64,000 nt of DNA from the IMG/VR virus record IMGVR_UViG_3300037042_006844, positions 1 to 64,000 of that record. One strand, 5' to 3'. Shown piece after piece: positions 10,104-17,634 of this stretch. The translations under genes were made by a program, and so were the position numbers. Under the pieces are notes generated by a model that saw only the letters and a list, made by a program, of their open reading frames with translations, was not told the DNA's origin and searched no databases. Each line of letters starts with the position of its first letter. Positions within the stretch are counted from its first letter, which is position 1.

Positions 10104-11117
10104 TTATACAGTTTTCAGAAACTCGTCGGTATCCCTGCGCAGTTCATCTTCTGGAACACTGTCAATTTTGTCTCCGTATTTTTGAGTCCAGAACAACTTG
10201 ATTTTACCAAGCATTGGTCCTGGCTTAATTTGGGGAAAGTTCTTCATGATCCAATCGCCCCCATATTGGCTTTTGGCTGGAGCGAAGGCTTCTATTTCAG
10301 CCTGCTTTTTCACCATGTCGGCGTATTTGTCTGGAAATTGTGTTTTGATGTAATGATCGGCATCGGGCTGAGTTCTATGCTTTTTGAGAGCTATTAACTT
10401 GGCTTTTATCTCTTGAGCAGTTGGGCGACCCGCACGCATACGTTTGCGGTCACTGTTGTTCAAACCAACGCCTTCAAAATAGCTACTGTCGAAAAGATCG
10501 GTATAGCTGATAAAGTTAACGATGTCGTCGATAGTTTTGATATCATCGAATTTGCCCAAAATTGGGGTATACCCCAGCATTTTGAGTCCGTCCCTAAGAT
10601 TTTTGGTCAAAAGGATATAGTGATACTGCCCCTTTTTATCTTCATAGATTTTGAAGAATCCATCGGTGCCATACTTGAAATGTAATCTGCGAGAAAACAC
10701 GCCCAAAATACCACTAAAATCGTTATAACTCAAATAGTCGTATTGGGCATCATAATCGTCCGCACCAGCATACAAAAAGTCTACGTGAACGGTTTTGCCA
10801 GGAGCTGACTCGCTGCTATACAACACACTATAGATATTGCCATTTTTACTGTAGTCTTTGATCAGCGGTCCCAAGTAAGTAAATAATGCATTTTTGACGT
10901 TCGGATTTCCGCTGACAACGATATCGATATCGCCATGATCGGCTTTGGCGGGCAGTGCTTTGCTCAACTTAAACTTGTCAAACCTATCACCAAGCCTATG
11001 TTTCAGTTCATCGAAAATAGTGTTCATCTCGGTGGTAGATACCCGTTGAGCACGACTCCCAAACAGCTTTCCACCCTCTTTTATCAGCCCCGTTAATATG
11101 TTGCCCAGTTTAATCAT
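10104..11117 (-). CDS. Pol-beta-superfamily nucleotidyltransferase-like protein (likely start MIKLGN at 11117)
   Basis: KADHGDIDIVV (DxD) and VHVDF (third acidic residue); C-terminal IKPGPMLGKI resembles the tail of CCA/polyA-type enzymes. Confidence 0.6.
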   Translation of the reverse strand: MIKLGNILTGLIKEGGKLFGSRAQRVSTTEMNTIFDELKHRLGDRFDKFKLSKALPAKADHGDIDIVVSGNPNVKNALFTYLGPLIKDYSKNGNIYSVLYSSESAPGKTVHVDFLYAGADDYDAQYDYLSYNDFSGILGVFSRRLHFKYGTDGFFKIYEDKKGQYHYILLTKNLRDGLKMLGYTPILGKFDDIKTIDDIVNFISYTDLFDSSYFEGVGLNNSDRKRMRAGRPTAQEIKAKLIALKKHRTQPDADHYIKTQFPDKYADMVKKQAEIEAFAPAKSQYGGDWIMKNFPQIKPGPMLGKIKLFWTQKYGDKIDSVPEDELRRDTDEFLKTV

Positions 11118-11511
11118 ACTGGTTCTTTCATAAAGAATTTCCAAAATTCAACATCCACCGTTTTGATATCGGGATCGATATGTTGAGCAGTTTCGATGAT
11201 AATTTTGCTTTGTGGGCATCTATCATGCAGCTTCACATACACCGAATTATTATCAAACTTATATTGAAATATATATATGGATAAATTCTACATTCCATCG
11301 GTCTTCTGTCATATATTCCACATCTGTCATTGACCAAAAACTTGCAATTCCCGTCGACTCCCCTTTTTATTCTATAAATCACACCATTTTTTGTGTCCAA
11401 ATCATCCACATCAAATTTCGATATTTCATGTGGCAATAAAATGGGAGCGTTCACATCCACGTTCTTTCCACAACATTTTTCTGTGCAAATTCCACAATTC
11501 AGCGTTATCAT
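11114..11511 (-). pseudogene. YkgJ-like (Fe-S/Zn cysteine-cluster) gene interrupted by a 2-nt frameshift in an (AT)5 run
   Basis: CxxCxxxCC...CxFL...CxIYxxRPxECRxYP signature. Removing one AT at 11269-11278 gives a 131-aa ORF with a DRCP motif that ends at an ATGA overlap with the next gene. Confidence 0.7.
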
Positions 11512-12570: not shown

Positions 12571-13344
12571 ATGGCAGAGTCCTATTGCGACACATCACTA
12601 ATTTATTTGGAGCCAATCAGCAAACCGATTGCCCGCAGCATGATCGAAAAAAACCACTATAGTCACAAGTGGTCTTGCTGCACCGTGGCTTACGGGGTTT
12701 TCTACAAAGAATACATCGAAAGCACATTTTTCGGTGGTTATCAGAGTAAACTAATCGGAGTATTGGTTTATGGAAATGCAGTGGGAAGATGCGCCAGCAA
12801 AAGCATCAGTCCTCTATTAGCCAACGATAATGTATTTGAACTCACCCGCTTGTGGGTCGCAGATGGCTATGGAAAAAACATAGAAAGTTATTGTATAGCT
12901 GAAAGCTTTCGGTTGTTAAACAAAGAATATCCCAAAATCAAATGCATATTGACCTATGCTGATAGCGAAGAAGGTCATCGTGGCATCATCTATCAAGCAT
13001 CTGGATTTATTTATCAAGGGGACAATTACGTCGATATTGCAATTATGCCGAACTACAGTGTAAGTTTGGACGGTCCTCCGAGCTACAAATGGATTCATAG
13101 TCGCAGTGTGTATAACCGATGGAAATCACACAATGTTGACAAGCTGAAAGAACGAATCGGCAAAACGTTTTGGCGCAAACGTGAAAGCGGAAAGCATCGC
13201 TATGTCAAATTCATTTGTGGCAAAATTGAAAACAAACGACTCAGAAAATCTTTGAAACACAAAGAATTGCCGTATCCAAAAGGTGCGATTTTCAAAGAAG
13301 TTGTCACTGAACACGTTGTGGACAGTTCACAGTCTTTCTTCTAA
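12571..13344 (+). CDS. Mom-like (GNAT-fold) DNA adenine modification protein
   Basis: KNHYSH, LIGVLVYG, FELTRLW, ILTYADSEEGHRGIIYQASGF, and K.RY motifs characteristic of phage Mom-like proteins. Confidence 0.8.
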   Translation: MAESYCDTSLIYLEPISKPIARSMIEKNHYSHKWSCCTVAYGVFYKEYIESTFFGGYQSKLIGVLVYGNAVGRCASKSISPLLANDNVFELTRLWVADGYGKNIESYCIAESFRLLNKEYPKIKCILTYADSEEGHRGIIYQASGFIYQGDNYVDIAIMPNYSVSLDGPPSYKWIHSRSVYNRWKSHNVDKLKERIGKTFWRKRESGKHRYVKFICGKIENKRLRKSLKHKELPYPKGAIFKEVVTEHVVDSSQSFF

Positions 13345-13350
13345 AACCGT

Positions 13351-13728
13351 TTAATTTTTGTAAAACTTCAATGTTTTTACCACTTTATCCAGACCCAAAT
13401 TTTTGAAGTTCAAATCGTCTTTCTTTTTACCCTGAAAGCTTTCGTGGTGGATGCTTACATCAAACCTTTTCATATCTTTGTCAAGAGGAATCACTGTAGC
13501 AGAATAATATGACACGGTGTTACTGTTTGGCAATACCAGAAACATTCCGAATCCTTTATCATATTTTTTAGTCCACGCATCTTTTCCAGACTCGAAATAT
13601 TTTGTCTCAGACACGTTGACCCCTCTTACATCATCTTGTGATCGGCGCAGTTTGGAAATTATTGTTTGAATAAGAGTGGGTTCATCGATCACTTCTTTGA
13701 TCAGTTGTATCAATTCTGTTTTTGTCAT
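13351..13728 (-). CDS. Hypothetical protein
   Basis: 125-aa ORF with the late box 5 nt upstream; N-terminus ELIQLIKE. Confidence 0.6.
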   Translation of the reverse strand: MTKTELIQLIKEVIDEPTLIQTIISKLRRSQDDVRGVNVSETKYFESGKDAWTKKYDKGFGMFLVLPNSNTVSYYSATVIPLDKDMKRFDVSIHHESFQGKKKDDLNFKNLGLDKVVKTLKFYKN

Positions 13729-13742
13729 ATATTAATAAATAG

Positions 13743-13764
13743 AAAAACCCCAGCTGGGGTTTTT
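13743..13764. terminator. Perfect 22-bp palindrome (terminator-like), a near copy of the capsid terminator
   Basis: AAAAACCCCAGCTGGGGTTTTT read directly. Confidence 0.7.
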
Positions 13765-13779
13765 TCGTCATGTAGTTGA

Positions 13780-15768
13780 TTAAATTTCAACAATGGCCTC
13801 TCGTTTATTTGCAGAATTTTTATCAAAATGACTTGTGTTTGATACTATATACGAGTTTATATTGGTCCAATTCAGCCGTTCGCTTAATTCGCTGGACACA
13901 TTAATGTAACATTTCTTACCCGAATATTTTTCAATTGCGGCGATGAACGTATTTTTCCAATCATTAAACGATCCGTGCGCAGTGCTGTTGCTGTAAATCT
14001 CAAGATCGTAATACGGAATGCTAGTAAAAATCAAATCAAACCGACGATCTGTTGAAAACTCCTCAAATTTACAATTGTGAATTTCTACATTGGTTAAATT
14101 TGCATTTTTAATAAAAGTCTGCAATTCACCGAATGTTTCAACGTTTGGTTCACATCCGATATACGTGCCATTTGGATATTTACTCTTAAATCCCAATAAT
14201 CTGCCGCCAAATCCACAACACGGGTCCAATACCACAGGCGAGGCCGTGTCCCCCAAATATTTGTGATATATTGCGGCTGCTAATAGCGGCTTAAAAAATG
14301 AAACGGTTATTCTTCTGGCAGACAAACCCTGTATCAATTGGTGTAAACTAAAATCAAATATTTCGCCACTATTATTACAACCGATTCTGTATTTTATAAC
14401 ATCGTGCATGATAGATTCGTCCTCCCACGCAGTTTTCGGCGCAACGTTACCTTTATAACTCGCTCCCCAGTAAGAATGGAAATGATGCTTCAAATAATTA
14501 TTGCCGATTGAATAAATATTGTTTGAAAATTCATTGGATTGCGCATTGTAAATCGATGTATAATCATATTCTCTAATTTTGCGCATAACCAATTCTATGC
14601 TCTCATATAACGGGGGATATGGAAATTCCGGTTGGAAATTGCGAATGAATTTTTTAAGCAACCACAAAAATGACTCAACGTAAGGTTGACCTTTGTCGAT
14701 AATGCAATTTGAAAAATATTCTTTATTTATTACCACATCGTCATATCCTAATACCAAATGGTTAATTTTATTATAACATGCTATATTTTTGATCAAATCG
14801 GTCTCACTGCGCGAGTTCGTTATGAGTGCAGACAAATCACTTTCGCGAATTCTATAAATATTATCGATGGTATTATTTTTTTGGCGATCCGATATAACAC
14901 TAGATAGCAGCTTAAAATTCAAATTTTCAATATTTGTTGGATGCCAATATTCGCCATCGATTTCAATGCACATATTGTGATCCTGTAAATAAAAATCAAC
15001 AGACGCGGACCTATCACCACAATCAACTACGTATGGATGTTTATATTTAATATTAAGAGAATTTAATAATGATTCAAAACATAGTTCTGGTTCTGTATCA
15101 ATAGTATTTATGGCACATTTTCTATTAACTGCACTATCCGACATTTTTTTGACAGCAGTTCGTTTATGCGTTTTACCATACATCGGATTATTGATTCCTA
15201 TTGAATTGTGCCCGGTAATATAATCGATTCTATATGGGTAGTAGTTTAACAACTTAACCGTTTTACCACACCCACATTCACACAGTGGGTGTGTATTATT
15301 AAATATGTGTTGTTTGACATAGGTCGGTTTGTCCAATTTGTGTATTTTTTTAATGTGCCAGCCCAGCAAATTACCGGAAGCAAATTGTTCTCCACAGATC
15401 ACACACGAATGTTTATTTTCTGTAGACATTAACCTATTTTTATATTCAATATTTTTAAGTTTGGATGAGCGATATTCACCACAGCGAATAACATAATCAT
15501 CTGGCGATATGCTATGTGTGTCCCTCAGATGAACAAAAAATCCAACCGAAGAATACTTGTTATTGCACAATTTACACTCAATTTTATTGACAGACCTAAT
15601 ATGCGTTTTACTTTTTTGTTTTCTAAACTCGCCGTATTTACATGCGTATTTATCGGATGTCAGTGCATGTTTCCATTTCAAATGACTTGAAAAGCTGTAT
15701 AATGAAATTTTTTCGCCGCAAATATCACAAGATTTCAACGACGGTTTATTAACAATAGCGCGACTCAT
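13780..15768 (-). CDS. Zn-finger/NUMOD3/DUF559-like endonuclease fused to a C-terminal SAM-dependent DNA amino-methyltransferase (likely start MSRAIV at 15768)
   Basis: Three CxxC..H..H fingers, CECGCG, GINNPMYGKTH (NUMOD3-like), TEPE...VDFY...IEIDGEYWH nuclease core, VLDPCCGFGGRLLG (motif I), GCEPN, DLIFTSIPYYDLEIY (motif IV-like). Confidence 0.8.
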   Translation of the reverse strand: MSRAIVNKPSLKSCDICGEKISLYSFSSHLKWKHALTSDKYACKYGEFRKQKSKTHIRSVNKIECKLCNNKYSSVGFFVHLRDTHSISPDDYVIRCGEYRSSKLKNIEYKNRLMSTENKHSCVICGEQFASGNLLGWHIKKIHKLDKPTYVKQHIFNNTHPLCECGCGKTVKLLNYYPYRIDYITGHNSIGINNPMYGKTHKRTAVKKMSDSAVNRKCAINTIDTEPELCFESLLNSLNIKYKHPYVVDCGDRSASVDFYLQDHNMCIEIDGEYWHPTNIENLNFKLLSSVISDRQKNNTIDNIYRIRESDLSALITNSRSETDLIKNIACYNKINHLVLGYDDVVINKEYFSNCIIDKGQPYVESFLWLLKKFIRNFQPEFPYPPLYESIELVMRKIREYDYTSIYNAQSNEFSNNIYSIGNNYLKHHFHSYWGASYKGNVAPKTAWEDESIMHDVIKYRIGCNNSGEIFDFSLHQLIQGLSARRITVSFFKPLLAAAIYHKYLGDTASPVVLDPCCGFGGRLLGFKSKYPNGTYIGCEPNVETFGELQTFIKNANLTNVEIHNCKFEEFSTDRRFDLIFTSIPYYDLEIYSNSTAHGSFNDWKNTFIAAIEKYSGKKCYINVSSELSERLNWTNINSYIVSNTSHFDKNSANKREAIVEI

Positions 15769-15775
15769 GTGTATA

Positions 15776-15804
15776 ACTATACACGATACGCTAAGAAAAT
15801 GCAA
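15776..15804 (-). promoter_or_regulatory. sigma70-like promoter of the endonuclease-methyltransferase gene
   Basis: TTGCAT (15804-15799), 17-nt spacer, TATAGT (15781-15776); ATG follows 7 nt later. Confidence 0.6.
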
Positions 15805-15831
15805 TGTTTTTTGCGTATCCTTTCACTATAC

Positions 15832-15869
15832 AAAAAAAAAAGAAAACCCCAGCGAAAGCTGGGGTTTTC
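15832..15869 (-). terminator. Rho-independent terminator after the major capsid gene
   Basis: Perfect 12-bp stem (15842-53 with 15858-69), 4-nt loop, T10 tract on the minus strand. Confidence 0.9.
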
Positions 15870-15894
15870 GTGTTATTCTAATTCGCTAGATCAA

Positions 15895-17634
15895 TTATAC
15901 TTGATCAAGGTCGGCAACCAGAACTTTTCCATAAAATTCGGGTCTGACTACCTTCTTAGCGTAGCGGGTCATCACACCACGGCGTGGCGTGAAATTCACT
16001 GGATCATAGACCAGTGGAGTTTGGATAAGCGGAATGTATGGGGCATACACTGCGCCGGTTTCGAGGAAGTTATTTCCACGGAAACCAATCAAGATGACGT
16101 TATCGGTCATATATGGGTTCTTGTAGACTTGGAAGCGACTTGCGAAGCTACCAACTCGGGCAACGCCCATTGCGAACTTGGCTTGATCACCATCGGTGTT
16201 GACCACATATCCTGGGATACTTTCTAGAATAGTTGCCACATCTGGAGAACAAACGAGGAAGTTAGCACCACCACGGAGAGTCAATTTGTGGATCGTGTTG
16301 GATACCTTTTGAATCTTGTTGCCAAGAGTCTGGAACCAAGTTGATTTCACATATGCTGTGCGGTTAGCGGCTGTGTTCTGATTACGTGTGAATGAAGCAA
16401 CGTTGGTCGTTGCGTTCACAGTCTTGGTGAACTCAGTTCCGATTGCAGCACTCCATGCTTCGGTGGTGACACCGGTCACGGATTCGTTTAACATGTCGAG
16501 GATTTCGAGGTCGATTTCCATTGACACATATTCGCTCAACAGTGCAGTAAGTTCTGCTTCTGCATCGATGCTGTGGTAAGCATTCAAATCTTGAGCAAGT
16601 TCTGGAGTCCAGATTGCTTTCAATTTGCGGGTCTTAGCCACGATAGGTTCGCTCTTGAGGTCAAGGTTGACTTCAGGAATACCAAGGTCAGTTCCAATTG
16701 CTTGGGTTGCGGTTGCGGCAGCTTTACCAGAACCTTCACCGGCAGTTTTACCATCTTCGAAATCACCACGCAAATTGTCCGTGGGTTGAATTGTATAAAT
16801 CAATCTTGGAGTTGCTGCCGGGTATATTGTGGCAGATGATTGGCTGACGAACATGTTAATTTGATAGTATGGGTTTGCCAAGCTACCAGTATTAACTGCT
16901 GTTGCATAAGTGTTCAACACAGTGTATGCTGTGTTGTTTGCTTGTGTAAGGCCGAATGAACGAACTGCGTTCAAATCAACATTCCAAAGATATCCGTTTG
17001 CAGCAACGGTTCCAGTTTGGGTGTTGTCATCAAGATTCAATGTTACCTTGAAAATACCTTTAACTTTACTAGTAGATGCAACAACTGATGAGCTAAATGC
17101 GGTATCAAATTGGAGATCGTTCCAACTTGCAGATGCAATTGTAGCTGATGTGCATGTAGAACTGGTCACAAATCTCTCTGAGTATGCATAACGACCTTGA
17201 CCGTAAAGACCGTTAACTGCTGAGTCGGTTGAACCGAGCTTCTTTTGAGTTCCACCGAACAAGCTTTCGCCGCTGGTGTGACCCAATTGGTTGTTGCCAT
17301 ACTTGAAGTCCAAGTAGAAAATCAGACCGCTTGGGAGATTCATCGGTTGAACACTGACGAATTCTTTAGCAGCGATTTCTGCGAACACACGGCGAACGAG
17401 TGGGAGAGCTACGCCAGCCCATTGTTCACTGTTTGCGCTTGTTCCGGTTGAGGTTGCTTCGTCAAGCAATTGTTTTGCTTGATTTTCCAAGAGGATCGAC
17501 ATGTGCGCCTTTTCGGTGCCACGGGTGCCTTCGAGAAGACCCGTTCGTTCCCACTTGGTTTGTAGACCACGGGTTTCAGCCATCAGCTTCGCCTGTGGAT
17601 TCATGTTTCCTGTCAATAGACTTTTTACATCCAT
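15895..17634 (-). CDS. gp23: Major capsid protein (gp23-like)
   Basis: LPLVRR, VQPMNLPSGLIFYL, AKTRKLKAIWTPELAQDLNAYHSIDAEAEL, YAPYIPL, GVMTRYA hallmark motifs. Confidence 0.97.
   Translation of the reverse strand: MDVKSLLTGNMNPQAKLMAETRGLQTKWERTGLLEGTRGTEKAHMSILLENQAKQLLDEATSTGTSANSEQWAGVALPLVRRVFAEIAAKEFVSVQPMNLPSGLIFYLDFKYGNNQLGHTSGESLFGGTQKKLGSTDSAVNGLYGQGRYAYSERFVTSSTCTSATIASASWNDLQFDTAFSSSVVASTSKVKGIFKVTLNLDDNTQTGTVAANGYLWNVDLNAVRSFGLTQANNTAYTVLNTYATAVNTGSLANPYYQINMFVSQSSATIYPAATPRLIYTIQPTDNLRGDFEDGKTAGEGSGKAAATATQAIGTDLGIPEVNLDLKSEPIVAKTRKLKAIWTPELAQDLNAYHSIDAEAELTALLSEYVSMEIDLEILDMLNESVTGVTTEAWSAAIGTEFTKTVNATTNVASFTRNQNTAANRTAYVKSTWFQTLGNKIQKVSNTIHKLTLRGGANFLVCSPDVATILESIPGYVVNTDGDQAKFAMGVARVGSFASRFQVYKNPYMTDNVILIGFRGNNFLETGAVYAPYIPLIQTPLVYDPVNFTPRRGVMTRYAKKVVRPEFYGKVLVADLDQV

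What the first reader, a model, noticed from the sequence alone, without database searches (positions are those of the whole stretch)
13780..15768. Homing-endonuclease-like nuclease fused to a DNA amino-methyltransferase, behind the major capsid gene
Seen: one ORF carries three C2H2 fingers, CECGCG, a NUMOD3-like motif and a DUF559/Vsr-like core (IEIDGEYWH), then a complete SAM-dependent MTase (DPCCGFGG motif I, TSIPY motif IV-like). Known: Zn-finger/NUMOD plus DUF559-type cores are typical of free-standing phage homing endonucleases, which normally lack a protective partner, whereas nuclease-MTase fusions are typical of type IIG restriction-modification enzymes. Inference: this may be a self-protecting selfish cassette that marks its own genome and cuts unmodified co-infecting phage or host DNA, a hybrid of homing and R-M logic.
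Basis: partly seen in the sequence, partly recalled or inferred. Interest (0 to 1): 0.82.

Follow-up and report, generated by a model that had tools for sequence, protein, structure and literature searches.

The report
Mobile nuclease-methylase cassette behind capsid gene
A 2.5-kb selfish DNA cassette sits just behind the capsid gene of a large uncultured phage; its single protein joins a homing-type DNA-cutting enzyme to a DNA-methylating enzyme, and this little-studied pairing recurs in many phages and may let a selfish nuclease mark its own genome as "self".

Summary
Window 13780-15768 (-) is one intact 662-aa ORF. It holds three C2H2 zinc fingers, a CxCGC/NUMOD3 segment, a Vsr-like nuclease core whose closest solved relative is the homing endonuclease I-Bth0305I, a 170-aa helical domain, and a Rossmann methyltransferase (DPCCGFGG, FTSIPY). 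Nuclease and methylase residues are invariant or nearly so in 94 homologues, and dN/dS is 0.08-0.23 for both halves.

The gene is not a core gene. It lies in a 2,489-bp insertion (13347-15835) between the gp23-type capsid gene and a convergent Mom-like gene. The closest relatives have capsid and Mom genes back-to-back, an empty site. Only 1 of 74 capsid-sampled relatives with enough downstream sequence carries it. In about 40 phages that do, it always lies directly behind the capsid gene. Cassette and capsid phylogenies disagree: L024/L025 cassettes are 85-91% identical, their capsids 68%.

So it is a mobile, free-standing homing-endonuclease gene that always carries a methylase. The same methylase module also occurs with HNH, GIY-YIG and LAGLIDADG endonuclease modules. 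Verdict: new variant of a known kind.

The parts
13347..15835 (-). Whole inserted cassette relative to the empty site of the closest relatives: promoter-like leader, fusion gene, second hairpin, ORF125
   Evidence: blastn junctions of the window against L087: homology ends at window 15836 and resumes at 13346. Empty-site alignments; gene-order tables.
13780..15768 (-). Fusion ORF, 662 aa: homing-type nuclease plus DNA amino-methyltransferase
15304..15735 (-). Three C2H2 (Ros/MucR-like) zinc-finger units, aa 12-155; presumed DNA-binding array. The number of units varies from 0 to 4 among homologues.
   Evidence: (finger 1 absent in 40/94 homologues, finger 2 in 20/94)
15124..15291 (-). CxCGC zinc-ribbon-like segment and NUMOD3-like motif, aa 160-215
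   Evidence: NUMOD3 at 191-210; C163 in 94/94
14764..15114 (-). Vsr-like / EDxHD-type nuclease domain, aa 219-335; E228, D258, E269, D271, H276
   Evidence: searches (3r3p_A I-Bth0305I E 3.3e-6; Vsr 1cw0 E 0.0087; residues kept in 93-94 of 94)
14254..14763 (-). Conserved helical domain of the methylase module, aa 336-505; also present in stand-alone relatives
13783..14253 (-). Rossmann catalytic domain, aa 506-662: motif I DPCCGFGG, E540, N565, motif IV FTSIPY. No target-recognition domain follows motif IV.
15842..15869 (-). Resident intrinsic-terminator hairpin after the capsid gene (12-bp stem plus T10). It is also present at empty sites, and the cassette starts in its T-run.
15769..15835 (-). 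Cassette leader with a promoter-like TTGCAT-N17-TATAGT ending 7 nt before the ATG. Partly conserved in the L011 cassette.
   Evidence: read; not among the scan hits, so tentative
13743..13764 (-). Second hairpin with the same stem (AAACCCCAGC/GCTGGGGTTT) directly after the fusion stop
   Evidence: the exact 10-mer occurs only at these two hairpins in 64 kb
13351..13728 (-). ORF125, an orphan ORF inside the insertion. It is absent from the filled relatives L011 and L024.

Best explanation
Shown: the locus is a roughly 2.5-kb mobile cassette that has invaded the short spacer between the major capsid gene and a convergent Mom-like gene. Its one large gene encodes a free-standing homing-endonuclease-type protein, with zinc fingers and NUMOD3 for long-site DNA binding and a Vsr-like/EDxHD-type catalytic core, fused in frame to an autonomous S-x-P-Y amino-methyltransferase module. 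Both halves are under purifying selection. The cassette is patchily distributed, always sits directly behind gp23-type capsid genes, and has moved between phage lineages.

Inferred mechanism: in a mixed infection, the DNA-binding array recognises a conserved sequence at or near the 3' end of the capsid gene in cassette-free genomes. The Vsr-like domain cuts there. Recombinational repair from a cassette-bearing genome then copies the cassette in (intron-less homing). The fused methylase methylates the carrier's DNA at or near the nuclease target. Parental-strand methylation then marks carrier genomes as self, while unmethylated incoming or co-infecting genomes are cut. This would be restriction-modification logic applied to a homing site. 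It would explain why this methylase clade is so often joined to endonucleases of several unrelated families.

The mobile-homing-cassette part deserves about 0.85 confidence. The self-marking role of the methylase deserves about 0.4. The overall figure reflects the weaker link.
For: Nuclease identity: a profile of 30 homologues hits I-Bth0305I (3r3p) at E 3.3e-6 and Vsr. The domain order, DNA-binding modules then a Vsr-like core, is the same as in I-Bth0305I (PMC3239194). E228, D271 and H276 are kept in 94/94 homologues, D258 and E269 in 93/94.

Methylase identity: D515, E540, S583 and P585 are kept in 94/94, Y586 in 93/94. Distant members of the same module pass Pfam N6_N4_Mtase. PADLOC mad2 scores E 9.5e-12. 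The whole two-domain fold matches giant-virus proteins annotated as DNA methylases, TM 0.56-0.68.

Mobility:
- Empty sites (capsid and Mom genes back-to-back) occur in L086, L087, L088, L090-92 and L110.
- Insertion junctions are precise.
- L024 (filled) and L110 (empty) share 91-99% capsid DNA identity in most windows and 94.7% in Mom.
- The L024 cassette is 85%/91% identical to that of L025, whose capsid protein is only 68% identical. L024 and L011 capsids are 87% identical but their cassettes only 57%/25%.
- Synonymous divergence (dS) between L024 and L025 is 0.57-0.78 in the cassette and 1.46 in the capsid gene.
- In 30 of 33 filled loci the gene starts 59-373 bp after the capsid stop. Downstream neighbours vary.
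- Only 1 of 74 evaluable capsid-sampled loci is filled.
- Candidate decayed or split copies exist in L046, L019 and L042, on single metagenomic contigs.

Selection: dN/dS is 0.08-0.23 for the nuclease half and 0.09-0.12 for the methylase half.

For the self-marking idea:
- The methylase module is joined to or adjacent to Vsr-like, HNH+NUMOD4, HNH-repeat, GIY-YIG+NUMOD1 and LAGLIDADG modules, including operon-like split forms (L166, L167).
- No target-recognition domain follows motif IV.
- I-Bth0305I tolerates most single substitutions in its site, so immunity by point mutation is hard for this nuclease family.
- No fixed filled-versus-empty difference was found in the last 24 capsid codons.
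Against: No activity of either half has been measured, and neither the nuclease nor the methylase target is known. The methylase module exists as a stand-alone protein in other phages and giant viruses, so it does not need a nuclease partner. N- and C-halves have been shuffled: their pairwise identities are uncorrelated, L016 and L027 are 62% identical in the C-half against 23% in the N-half, and N-type is not clustered on the methylase tree. That fits poorly with tightly co-adapted specificities. The insertion itself may split the target, in which case methylation is not needed for immunity. Endonuclease genes without a methylase occupy the same spot in some phages (L001, L006, L042). The fourth residue of the EDxHD motif aligns to N284, not Asp (alignment). 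The window protein itself does not reach any Pfam methylase threshold.
Confidence: 0.45

Rival explanations
1. Cargo model. The endonuclease half drives homing exactly as above, but the methylase is an independent orphan DNA methylase with its own short motif. It protects phage DNA from host restriction enzymes. The fusion simply guarantees that a useful gene and a selfish driver travel and persist together. Immunity to the nuclease comes from disruption of the target by the insertion or from sequence differences.
For: Stand-alone homologues of the module sit among nucleotide-metabolism genes in Vibrio phages and occur in giant viruses. The N- and C-halves recombine independently. Phage orphan methylases are known to be sporadic and to be invaded by homing elements (PMC9957025). 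Insertion points lie right at the capsid stop codon or right after the resident hairpin, so the insertion could split a target. Both halves are under purifying selection.
Against: This model does not explain why this methylase clade in particular is mostly found joined to endonuclease modules of several families. Most of the best 150 representatives carry extra N- or C-terminal regions of 250-500 aa. It does not explain why no target-recognition domain follows motif IV. No host restriction context is known.
Confidence: 0.33
2. Single-chain restriction-modification weapon without homing. The enzyme degrades unmethylated host or competitor DNA genome-wide, like a type IIG enzyme, while the phage's own DNA is methylated. 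Its patchy distribution reflects ordinary gene gain and loss at a recombination hotspot.
For: Nuclease and methylase lie in one polypeptide. The methylase half matches an R-M-like defence methylase, mad2. Intron endonucleases are known to serve in phage-phage competition (title and abstract of PMC11620839).
Against: The nuclease module is of homing type, with long-site DNA-binding arrays. The strict site fidelity behind one gene, with variable downstream neighbours, argues for a site-specific drive. No type IIG or type I methylase structure appears among the fold matches, and no C-terminal target-recognition domain is present.
Confidence: 0.08
3. Domesticated, vertically inherited late gene of this phage clade, for example a DNA-processing or regulatory enzyme tied to head assembly, and no longer mobile.
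For: It has a constant position behind the capsid gene. Capsid and methylase-half identities correlate (Pearson 0.68, Mantel p 0.0005). Purifying selection is strong.
Against: The closest relatives have empty sites, and 73 of 74 sampled relatives lack the gene. Cassette and capsid similarities are discordant. Candidate decayed copies exist. Terminator hairpins insulate the gene from capsid transcription.
Confidence: 0.04
4. The methyltransferase acts on RNA or protein (for example rRNA or tRNA m2G/m6A, or glutamine methylation) rather than on DNA.
For: The nearest solved structures carrying an (N/D)PP(F/Y) motif are RNA enzymes, METTL5 and Trm11, at TM about 0.38. There are weak Pfam and NCBIfam hits to RNA methylase families and PrmC.
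Against: All these matches are generic Rossmann similarities. Distant members of the same module pass the DNA methylase family PF01555, and one also matches PF02384. The module is fused to DNA-binding and DNA-cutting domains, and it matches mad2.
Confidence: 0.05

Closest known systems
I-Bth0305I and the EDxHD (Vsr-like) homing endonuclease family, including phage Hef (PMC3239194)
   Same: It is the best solved-structure match of the nuclease core. The bipartite order is the same: NUMOD-type DNA-binding region, then a Vsr-like catalytic domain. The Glu, Asp and His equivalents and the extra acidic residue (E269) are conserved. It is phage-borne and mobile.
   Different: I-Bth0305I is intron-encoded and has no methylase. 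Here the gene is free-standing, carries C2H2 fingers, and continues into a 327-aa methylase module. The last Asp of the motif is not clearly conserved.
Free-standing homing endonuclease genes of T4-like phages (Seg/Mob type) and HEG islands next to essential genes (PMC10055350)
   Same: An intergenic insertion next to a highly conserved essential gene, with patchy distribution among relatives. Capsid neighbourhoods are a frequent location: 31% of T5orf172 HEG neighbourhoods contain a predicted capsid gene.
   Different: Those genes encode GIY-YIG, HNH or T5orf172 nucleases without any methylase. The Seg/Mob comparison rests on my own knowledge, not on a test here.
Type IIG / IIC restriction-modification fusion enzymes (for example the MmeI family; own knowledge)
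   Same: An N-terminal nuclease, a helical region and an amino-methyltransferase in one chain; possible self/non-self logic through methylation.
   Different: There is no C-terminal target-recognition domain. The nuclease is Vsr-like with homing-type DNA-binding arrays. There is no structural or Pfam match to N6_Mtase for the window protein. It is phage-borne and site-specifically mobile.
Actinophage orphan methylases carrying an intein and a second LAGLIDADG endonuclease domain (PMC9957025)
   Same: A phage DNA methylase physically joined to a homing-endonuclease domain. Its authors also weighed a selfish insertion against a restriction-modification fusion.
   Different: There the endonuclease is an insertion inside a resident methylase gene, and no transfer between lineages was shown. 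Here the whole endonuclease-methylase gene is the mobile unit at a capsid-flanking site, and the methylase family and nuclease fold are different.
GIY-YIG nuclease / N-methyltransferase fusions and operons in Lactobacillales (PMC1564403)
   Same: A recurrent nuclease-methylase association interpreted as restriction-modification-like. The same paper suggested viewing homing endonucleases as a kind of R-M system.
   Different: They are cellular Slx1-like GIY-YIG proteins with a COG4123 methylase, not phage homing cassettes.

Membership tests
EDxHD / Vsr-like homing endonucleases | Sequence similarity of the catalytic domain to I-Bth0305I and Vsr | tested here: met
   Profile against PDB: 3r3p_A E 3.3e-6, 1cw0_A E 0.0087. 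Pfam Vsr scores 21.3 bits, below its 27-bit cutoff, for the window protein; some homologues reach the cutoff.
EDxHD / Vsr-like homing endonucleases | Conserved Glu (E170), Asp (D196) and His (H213) equivalents | tested here: met
   E228 94/94, D258 93/94, H276 94/94, aligned to the I-Bth0305I positions.
EDxHD / Vsr-like homing endonucleases | Final Asp of the motif (D222 in I-Bth0305I, D97 in Vsr) | tested here: inconclusive
   The HMM alignment puts N284 at that position. The nearby D294 is not invariant.
EDxHD / Vsr-like homing endonucleases | N-terminal NUMOD-type DNA-binding region preceding the nuclease | tested here: met
   NUMOD3 at aa 191-210 is sub-threshold in the window protein (17.5 bits against a 20.4-bit cutoff) and above threshold in homologue P0097 (24 bits).
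Free-standing homing endonuclease gene (mobile element) | Presence/absence polymorphism with precise boundaries among otherwise collinear relatives | tested here: met
   Empty sites in L086-L088, L090-92 and L110; junctions at window 15836 and 13346; L024 against L110.
Free-standing homing endonuclease gene (mobile element) | Same insertion locus in different genomes | tested here: met
   The gene lies directly downstream of the gp23-type capsid gene in every locus holding both genes.
Free-standing homing endonuclease gene (mobile element) | Element phylogeny discordant with flanking genes (horizontal spread) | tested here: met
   L024/L025 cassettes are 85-91% identical against 68% for their capsids. 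L024/L011 capsids are 87% identical against 57%/25% for their cassettes. dS values agree.
Free-standing homing endonuclease gene (mobile element) | Site-specific cleavage of the empty allele and super-Mendelian inheritance | not testable with these tools
   Requires biochemistry and phage crosses.
DNA N6-adenine / N4-cytosine amino-methyltransferases | SAM-binding motif I and catalytic motif IV, (S/N/D)-P-P-(Y/F) | tested here: met
   DPCCGFGG is present. Motif IV is S-I-P-Y, with Ile in place of the first Pro: S583 94/94, I584 92/94, P585 94/94, Y586 93/94. The stand-alone relative has the canonical TSPPY.
DNA N6-adenine / N4-cytosine amino-methyltransferases | Passes the curated family model (Pfam PF01555 N6_N4_Mtase or PF02384 N6_Mtase) | tested here: not met
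   The window protein has no PF01555 or PF02384 hit at E<=1. More distant members of the same module do pass PF01555: P0262 37.1 bits, P0292 41.5 bits, P0316 71.8 bits. Motif order here is I then IV, not the permuted order of PF01555.
DNA N6-adenine / N4-cytosine amino-methyltransferases | DNA is the substrate; the modified base is known | not testable with these tools
   Only indirect evidence: fusion to DNA-binding and nuclease domains, the mad2 match and the annotations of relatives.
Type IIG restriction-modification enzymes | Nuclease and methylase in one polypeptide | tested here: met
Type IIG restriction-modification enzymes | A target-recognition domain shared by both activities (C-terminal to the methylase), gamma-class N6_Mtase domain | tested here: not met
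   Only about 75 residues (strands 5-7) follow motif IV. There is no PF02384 hit. No type IIG or HsdM structure appears in the top 50 fold matches.

The most novel reading that the evidence does not exclude
Endonuclease-methylase fusions form a widespread, unrecognised class of 'self-marking' homing elements. The methylase epigenetically immunises the carrier genome at a target that cannot be changed by mutation, here the invariant 3' end of the capsid gene. The same enzyme can then both drive its own spread and act as a weapon against unmethylated co-infecting phages. On this reading the solution arose several times, with Vsr-like, HNH, GIY-YIG and LAGLIDADG nucleases, and would be a living intermediate between homing endonucleases and restriction-modification systems.
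Probability: 0.3. Interest if true: 0.85.

Novelty: new variant of a known kind. Interest (0 to 1): 0.62.

Why it matters
Homing endonucleases and restriction-modification systems are usually treated as two separate kinds of selfish nuclease. One gets immunity by inserting into its own target. The other gets it by methylation. A mobile, site-specific homing gene that always carries a methylase, together with the same methylase joined to at least four other endonuclease families, makes the long-standing idea of an evolutionary bridge between the two directly testable (it was raised in PMC1564403). The work also defines a natural pair of filled and empty alleles (L024 and L110), which gives candidate substrate sequences for cleavage and methylation assays. 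In practical terms, it annotates a family of more than 250 'hypothetical proteins' in large environmental phages. It also points to a compact Zn-finger/Vsr-like nuclease and an uncharacterised viral DNA methylase fold with no close solved structure.

Tried and rejected
1. Conserved core gene of the capsid module. This was my first reading, because the gene was always behind gp23. I rejected it when capsid-based sampling showed 73 of 74 evaluable relatives empty and the nearest relatives with capsid and Mom genes back-to-back.

2. Long co-conversion tract in the capsid gene between L024 and L025, suggested by one 2.8-kb blastn HSP. Sliding windows show that the identity step lies at the capsid stop codon, not inside the gene.

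3. Assigning the methylase to a characterised structural family. A sequence profile against PDB gave no methylase hit. Foldseek against PDB gave only generic Rossmann enzymes, TM 0.3-0.39.

4. Searching for an immunity polymorphism. I compared the last 24 capsid codons in 23 filled and 68 empty alleles and found no fixed difference. The best hit was one Phe codon position, p 5e-5, uncorrected for phylogeny. Within the Mom clade, filled alleles have GAA and empty ones GAG at the PEF Glu codon (3 against 4 lineages). This does not hold in the wider sample, so it stays a lead only.

5. N-type against methylase tree. The tree backbone is weak and my N-type label (a regex) is crude, so one search is only suggestive of module shuffling.

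6. Paralogues in the window: none.

7. ORF125: no family, no homologue in any fetched locus, no atlas lead.

I rebuilt the alignment without it.

10. Literature: no paper in the searchable library describes DUF7487 or this fusion.
Full report
**1. What is in the sequence**

The minus strand of the window carries one uninterrupted ORF from 15804 (TTG) or 15768 (ATG) to the stop at 13780. Homologues start with the same M-(K/S)-R...NKP, so the ATG and a 662-aa product are the best reading.

Pfam hits are individually below threshold but line up as expected: zinc fingers, NUMOD3 at 191-210, Vsr at 219-279, and a methyltransferase at 513-583. The gene upstream (15895-17634, minus) is a gp23-type major head protein (phrog_138, E 2.5e-71). 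The window is the first 64 kb of a 303,564-bp IMG/VR contig.

**2. The two halves**

A profile of 30 homologues finds the catalytic domain of the homing endonuclease I-Bth0305I (3r3p) as its best solved relative, at E 3.3e-6, followed by Vsr. That enzyme defines the EDxHD family and has the same layout, with NUMOD-type DNA-binding repeats followed by a Vsr-like nuclease (PMC3239194).

In 94 homologues, E228, D271 and H276 are invariant, and D258 and E269 are kept in 93. The last Asp of the motif is not clearly matched. The number of N-terminal fingers varies from 0 to 4.

The C-terminal 327 residues fold confidently (pLDDT 92, pTM 0.89) into a helical domain plus a minimal Rossmann domain. Nothing resembling a target-recognition domain follows motif IV.

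No solved structure is close. Sequence searches of PDB find no methylase, and Foldseek finds only generic class I enzymes. Several lines still link this half to DNA methylases:
- Predicted viral structures with the same two-domain fold are annotated as DNA methylases (TM 0.56-0.68).
- A stand-alone Vibrio-phage relative has the canonical TSPPY motif and sits among nucleotide-metabolism genes.
- More distant members of the module pass Pfam N6_N4_Mtase.
- The defence-system methylase model mad2 matches at E 9.5e-12.

DNA methylation is therefore the likely activity, but it is inferred. The base and the motif are unknown.

**3. Family and location**

More than 250 full-length homologues exist, nearly all from metagenomes and none named. 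Only one full-length copy turned up in 185,579 species genomes, on a short contig binned into a metagenome-assembled genome (MAG).

In every locus fetched through the fusion protein that also holds a gp23-type capsid gene, the fusion lies just downstream on the same strand. In 30 of 33 non-redundant loci the gap is 59-373 bp. In three loci one extra endonuclease-like gene intervenes. Downstream neighbours differ: Mom, a g11577-like gene, GP88, gp13, AAA, beta-helix. The capsid gene is the only constant partner.

**4. It is an insertion, not a core gene**

I fetched 80 loci through the capsid protein instead (capsid identity 50-85%). Only one carries the fusion. Among loci with at least 1.5 kb downstream of the capsid gene, 73 are empty.

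The closest relatives (L086 and L087, capsid 84% identical; also L088, L090-92, L110) are collinear with the window on both sides. In them the capsid gene is followed, after about 65 bp holding one terminator hairpin, by the convergent Mom-like gene.

Relative to L087, the window has 2,489 extra bases (13347-15835): a promoter-like leader, the fusion gene, a second copy of the hairpin stem, and the orphan ORF125. Two other members of this clade, L011 and L024, are filled with the fusion gene alone.

**5. It has moved**

- L024 (filled) and L110 (empty) share 91-99% capsid DNA identity in most 150-nt windows and 94.7% in Mom.
- L024 switches from L110-like to L025-like sequence within a few bases of the capsid stop codon.
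- The L024 cassette is 85% (methylase half) and 91% (nuclease half) identical in protein to that of L025, whose capsid protein is only 68% identical.
- Conversely, L024 and L011 capsids are 87% identical but their cassettes only 57% and 25%. L012 and L016 show the same pattern.
- Synonymous divergence between L024 and L025 is 0.57-0.78 in the cassette against 1.46 in the capsid gene.
- Two insertion points are seen in the same spacer: after the hairpin (window, L011) and at the stop codon (L024, L025).
- Candidate decayed or split copies exist. L046 appears nuclease-less with the methylase reading frame interrupted. L019 looks N-terminally cut. L042 has fingers and a DUF559-like piece but no methylase. 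Each rests on a single metagenomic contig, so sequencing or assembly error cannot be excluded.

Together these are the standard signatures of a free-standing homing endonuclease gene. Homing endonuclease genes are known to cluster next to essential genes, including capsid genes (PMC10055350).

**6. Both halves are kept working**

dN/dS is 0.08-0.23 for the nuclease half and 0.09-0.12 for the methylase half, similar to the capsid gene. The two halves are nevertheless shuffled relative to each other. Their pairwise identities are uncorrelated. L016 and L027 share 62% in the methylase half but 23% in the N-half. N-type is not clustered on the methylase tree, though that tree is weak.

**7. A wider pattern**

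The methylase module has 4,275 representatives at E<=0.001. Most of the best 150 carry 250-500 extra residues. Where I looked, the extra regions were endonuclease modules:
- NUMOD4 plus HNH at the C-terminus.
- Homing-endonuclease-associated repeats or DUF7487 (the Pfam name that overlaps the Vsr-like module) at the N-terminus.
- LAGLIDADG and DUF723 fusions, according to the ESM Atlas.
- A GIY-YIG/NUMOD1 gene overlapping the methylase gene, again directly behind a gp23 gene (L167).
- A Vsr-like gene overlapping a methylase-only gene (L166).

The searchable literature has related observations, but I found no description of this family. The related cases are a LAGLIDADG domain inside actinophage methylases (PMC9957025) and GIY-YIG-methylase fusions in bacteria (PMC1564403).

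**8. How it most likely works**

Shown: the domain identities, conservation, insertion, site fidelity and horizontal spread.

Inferred: the finger/NUMOD3 array binds a long site at or near the conserved capsid 3' end of empty genomes, the Vsr-like domain cuts, and repair from a filled genome copies the cassette.

For the methylase, two readings are close.

Self-marking (about 0.4). Methylation at the nuclease target protects carrier DNA in the way restriction-modification systems do. This reading explains several things:
- the repeated endonuclease-methylase linkage, including operon-like split forms;
- the lack of a target-recognition domain in the methylase half;
- how a nuclease family that tolerates single substitutions in its site could spare its own intact target.

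The lack of any fixed filled-versus-empty difference in the last 24 capsid codons is compatible with it, but that evidence is weak.

Cargo (about 0.33). The methylase is an orphan anti-restriction enzyme riding a homing driver. This fits its autonomy, the shuffling of the halves, and the possibility that the insertion itself splits the target.

A non-homing restriction-like weapon, a domesticated core gene and a non-DNA substrate are all less likely, for the reasons given under the rival explanations.

**9. Verdict**

Its reading as a selfish cassette combining a homing-type nuclease with a DNA methylase is supported and is now backed by comparative evidence. The self-protection mechanism remains a hypothesis. 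I file the finding as a new variant of a known kind: a free-standing Vsr-like homing endonuclease gene with an obligate fused methylase.

Noticed in passing
window 12571-13344 (+): A Mom-like DNA modification gene (Pfam Mom E 1.5e-43; phrog_1384) lies convergent to the capsid gene. It is resident, not part of the cassette: it is present at the same place in the empty-site relatives at 73-83% identity. This suggests that this phage clade modifies adenines in its DNA.
   Followed up: partly
window 15842-15869 and 13743-13764: The fusion gene is bracketed by two hairpins with the same stem (AAACCCCAGC/GCTGGGGTTT). The exact 10-mer occurs nowhere else in the 64 kb. Empty sites have one such hairpin. 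In L024 the resident hairpin lies downstream of the cassette instead, and its loop is the reverse complement of the loop in L110 (TTTC against GAAA).
   Followed up: partly
window 13351-13728 (-): ORF125 lies inside the insertion, after the second hairpin. It has no family, no homologue in any of about 200 fetched loci, and no atlas lead. It may be a second, independent insertion or a non-coding remnant.
   Followed up: partly
L001 6148-7860 (LR756508.1, 484-kb uncultured phage): Between the capsid gene and the fusion homologue sits another 570-aa gene with multiple zinc fingers and a Vsr/DUF559-like core, but no methylase. Other loci have an Endonuclease_7 gene or a small DUF7487 gene in the same slot. 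The capsid 3' flank is a hotspot for several endonuclease genes.
   Followed up: partly
L167 3812-6257; L166 3383-5844: Split versions occur. In L167 a GIY-YIG/NUMOD1 endonuclease gene overlaps by 14 nt a 418-aa methylase-module gene directly behind a gp23 gene. In L166 a 486-aa Vsr-like gene overlaps by 4 nt a 334-aa methylase-only gene, in a contig with three more DUF7487 genes within 5 kb.
   Followed up: partly
capsid 3' end, window about 15925-15950; L011, L024 against L086-L088, L110: In three matched filled/empty comparisons within the Mom clade, synonymous differences cluster in the codons for K-K-V-V-R-P-E-F, about 40-55 nt before the capsid stop. Filled alleles have GAA for Glu and empty ones GAG. 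This does not hold in the wider sample. It may be an immunity or co-conversion patch, or chance.
   Followed up: partly
window 14001-16000: The cassette is AT-richer (GC 0.35) than the adjacent capsid and scaffold genes (0.44-0.46), which fits a different origin.
   Followed up: no
window 10104-11144 (-) and 11233-11511 (-): A 346-aa protein has a weak PHROG 'DNA polymerase' match (phrog_24943, E 4e-11; possibly a nucleotidyltransferase). A Cys-rich 92-aa ORF lies between the Mom side and the next conserved gene. Neither was examined further.
   Followed up: no
L004 (Microcystis phage Mel-JY01) and L007: A ribosomal protein S21 gene lies just upstream of the capsid module in relatives of this phage group.
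   Followed up: no
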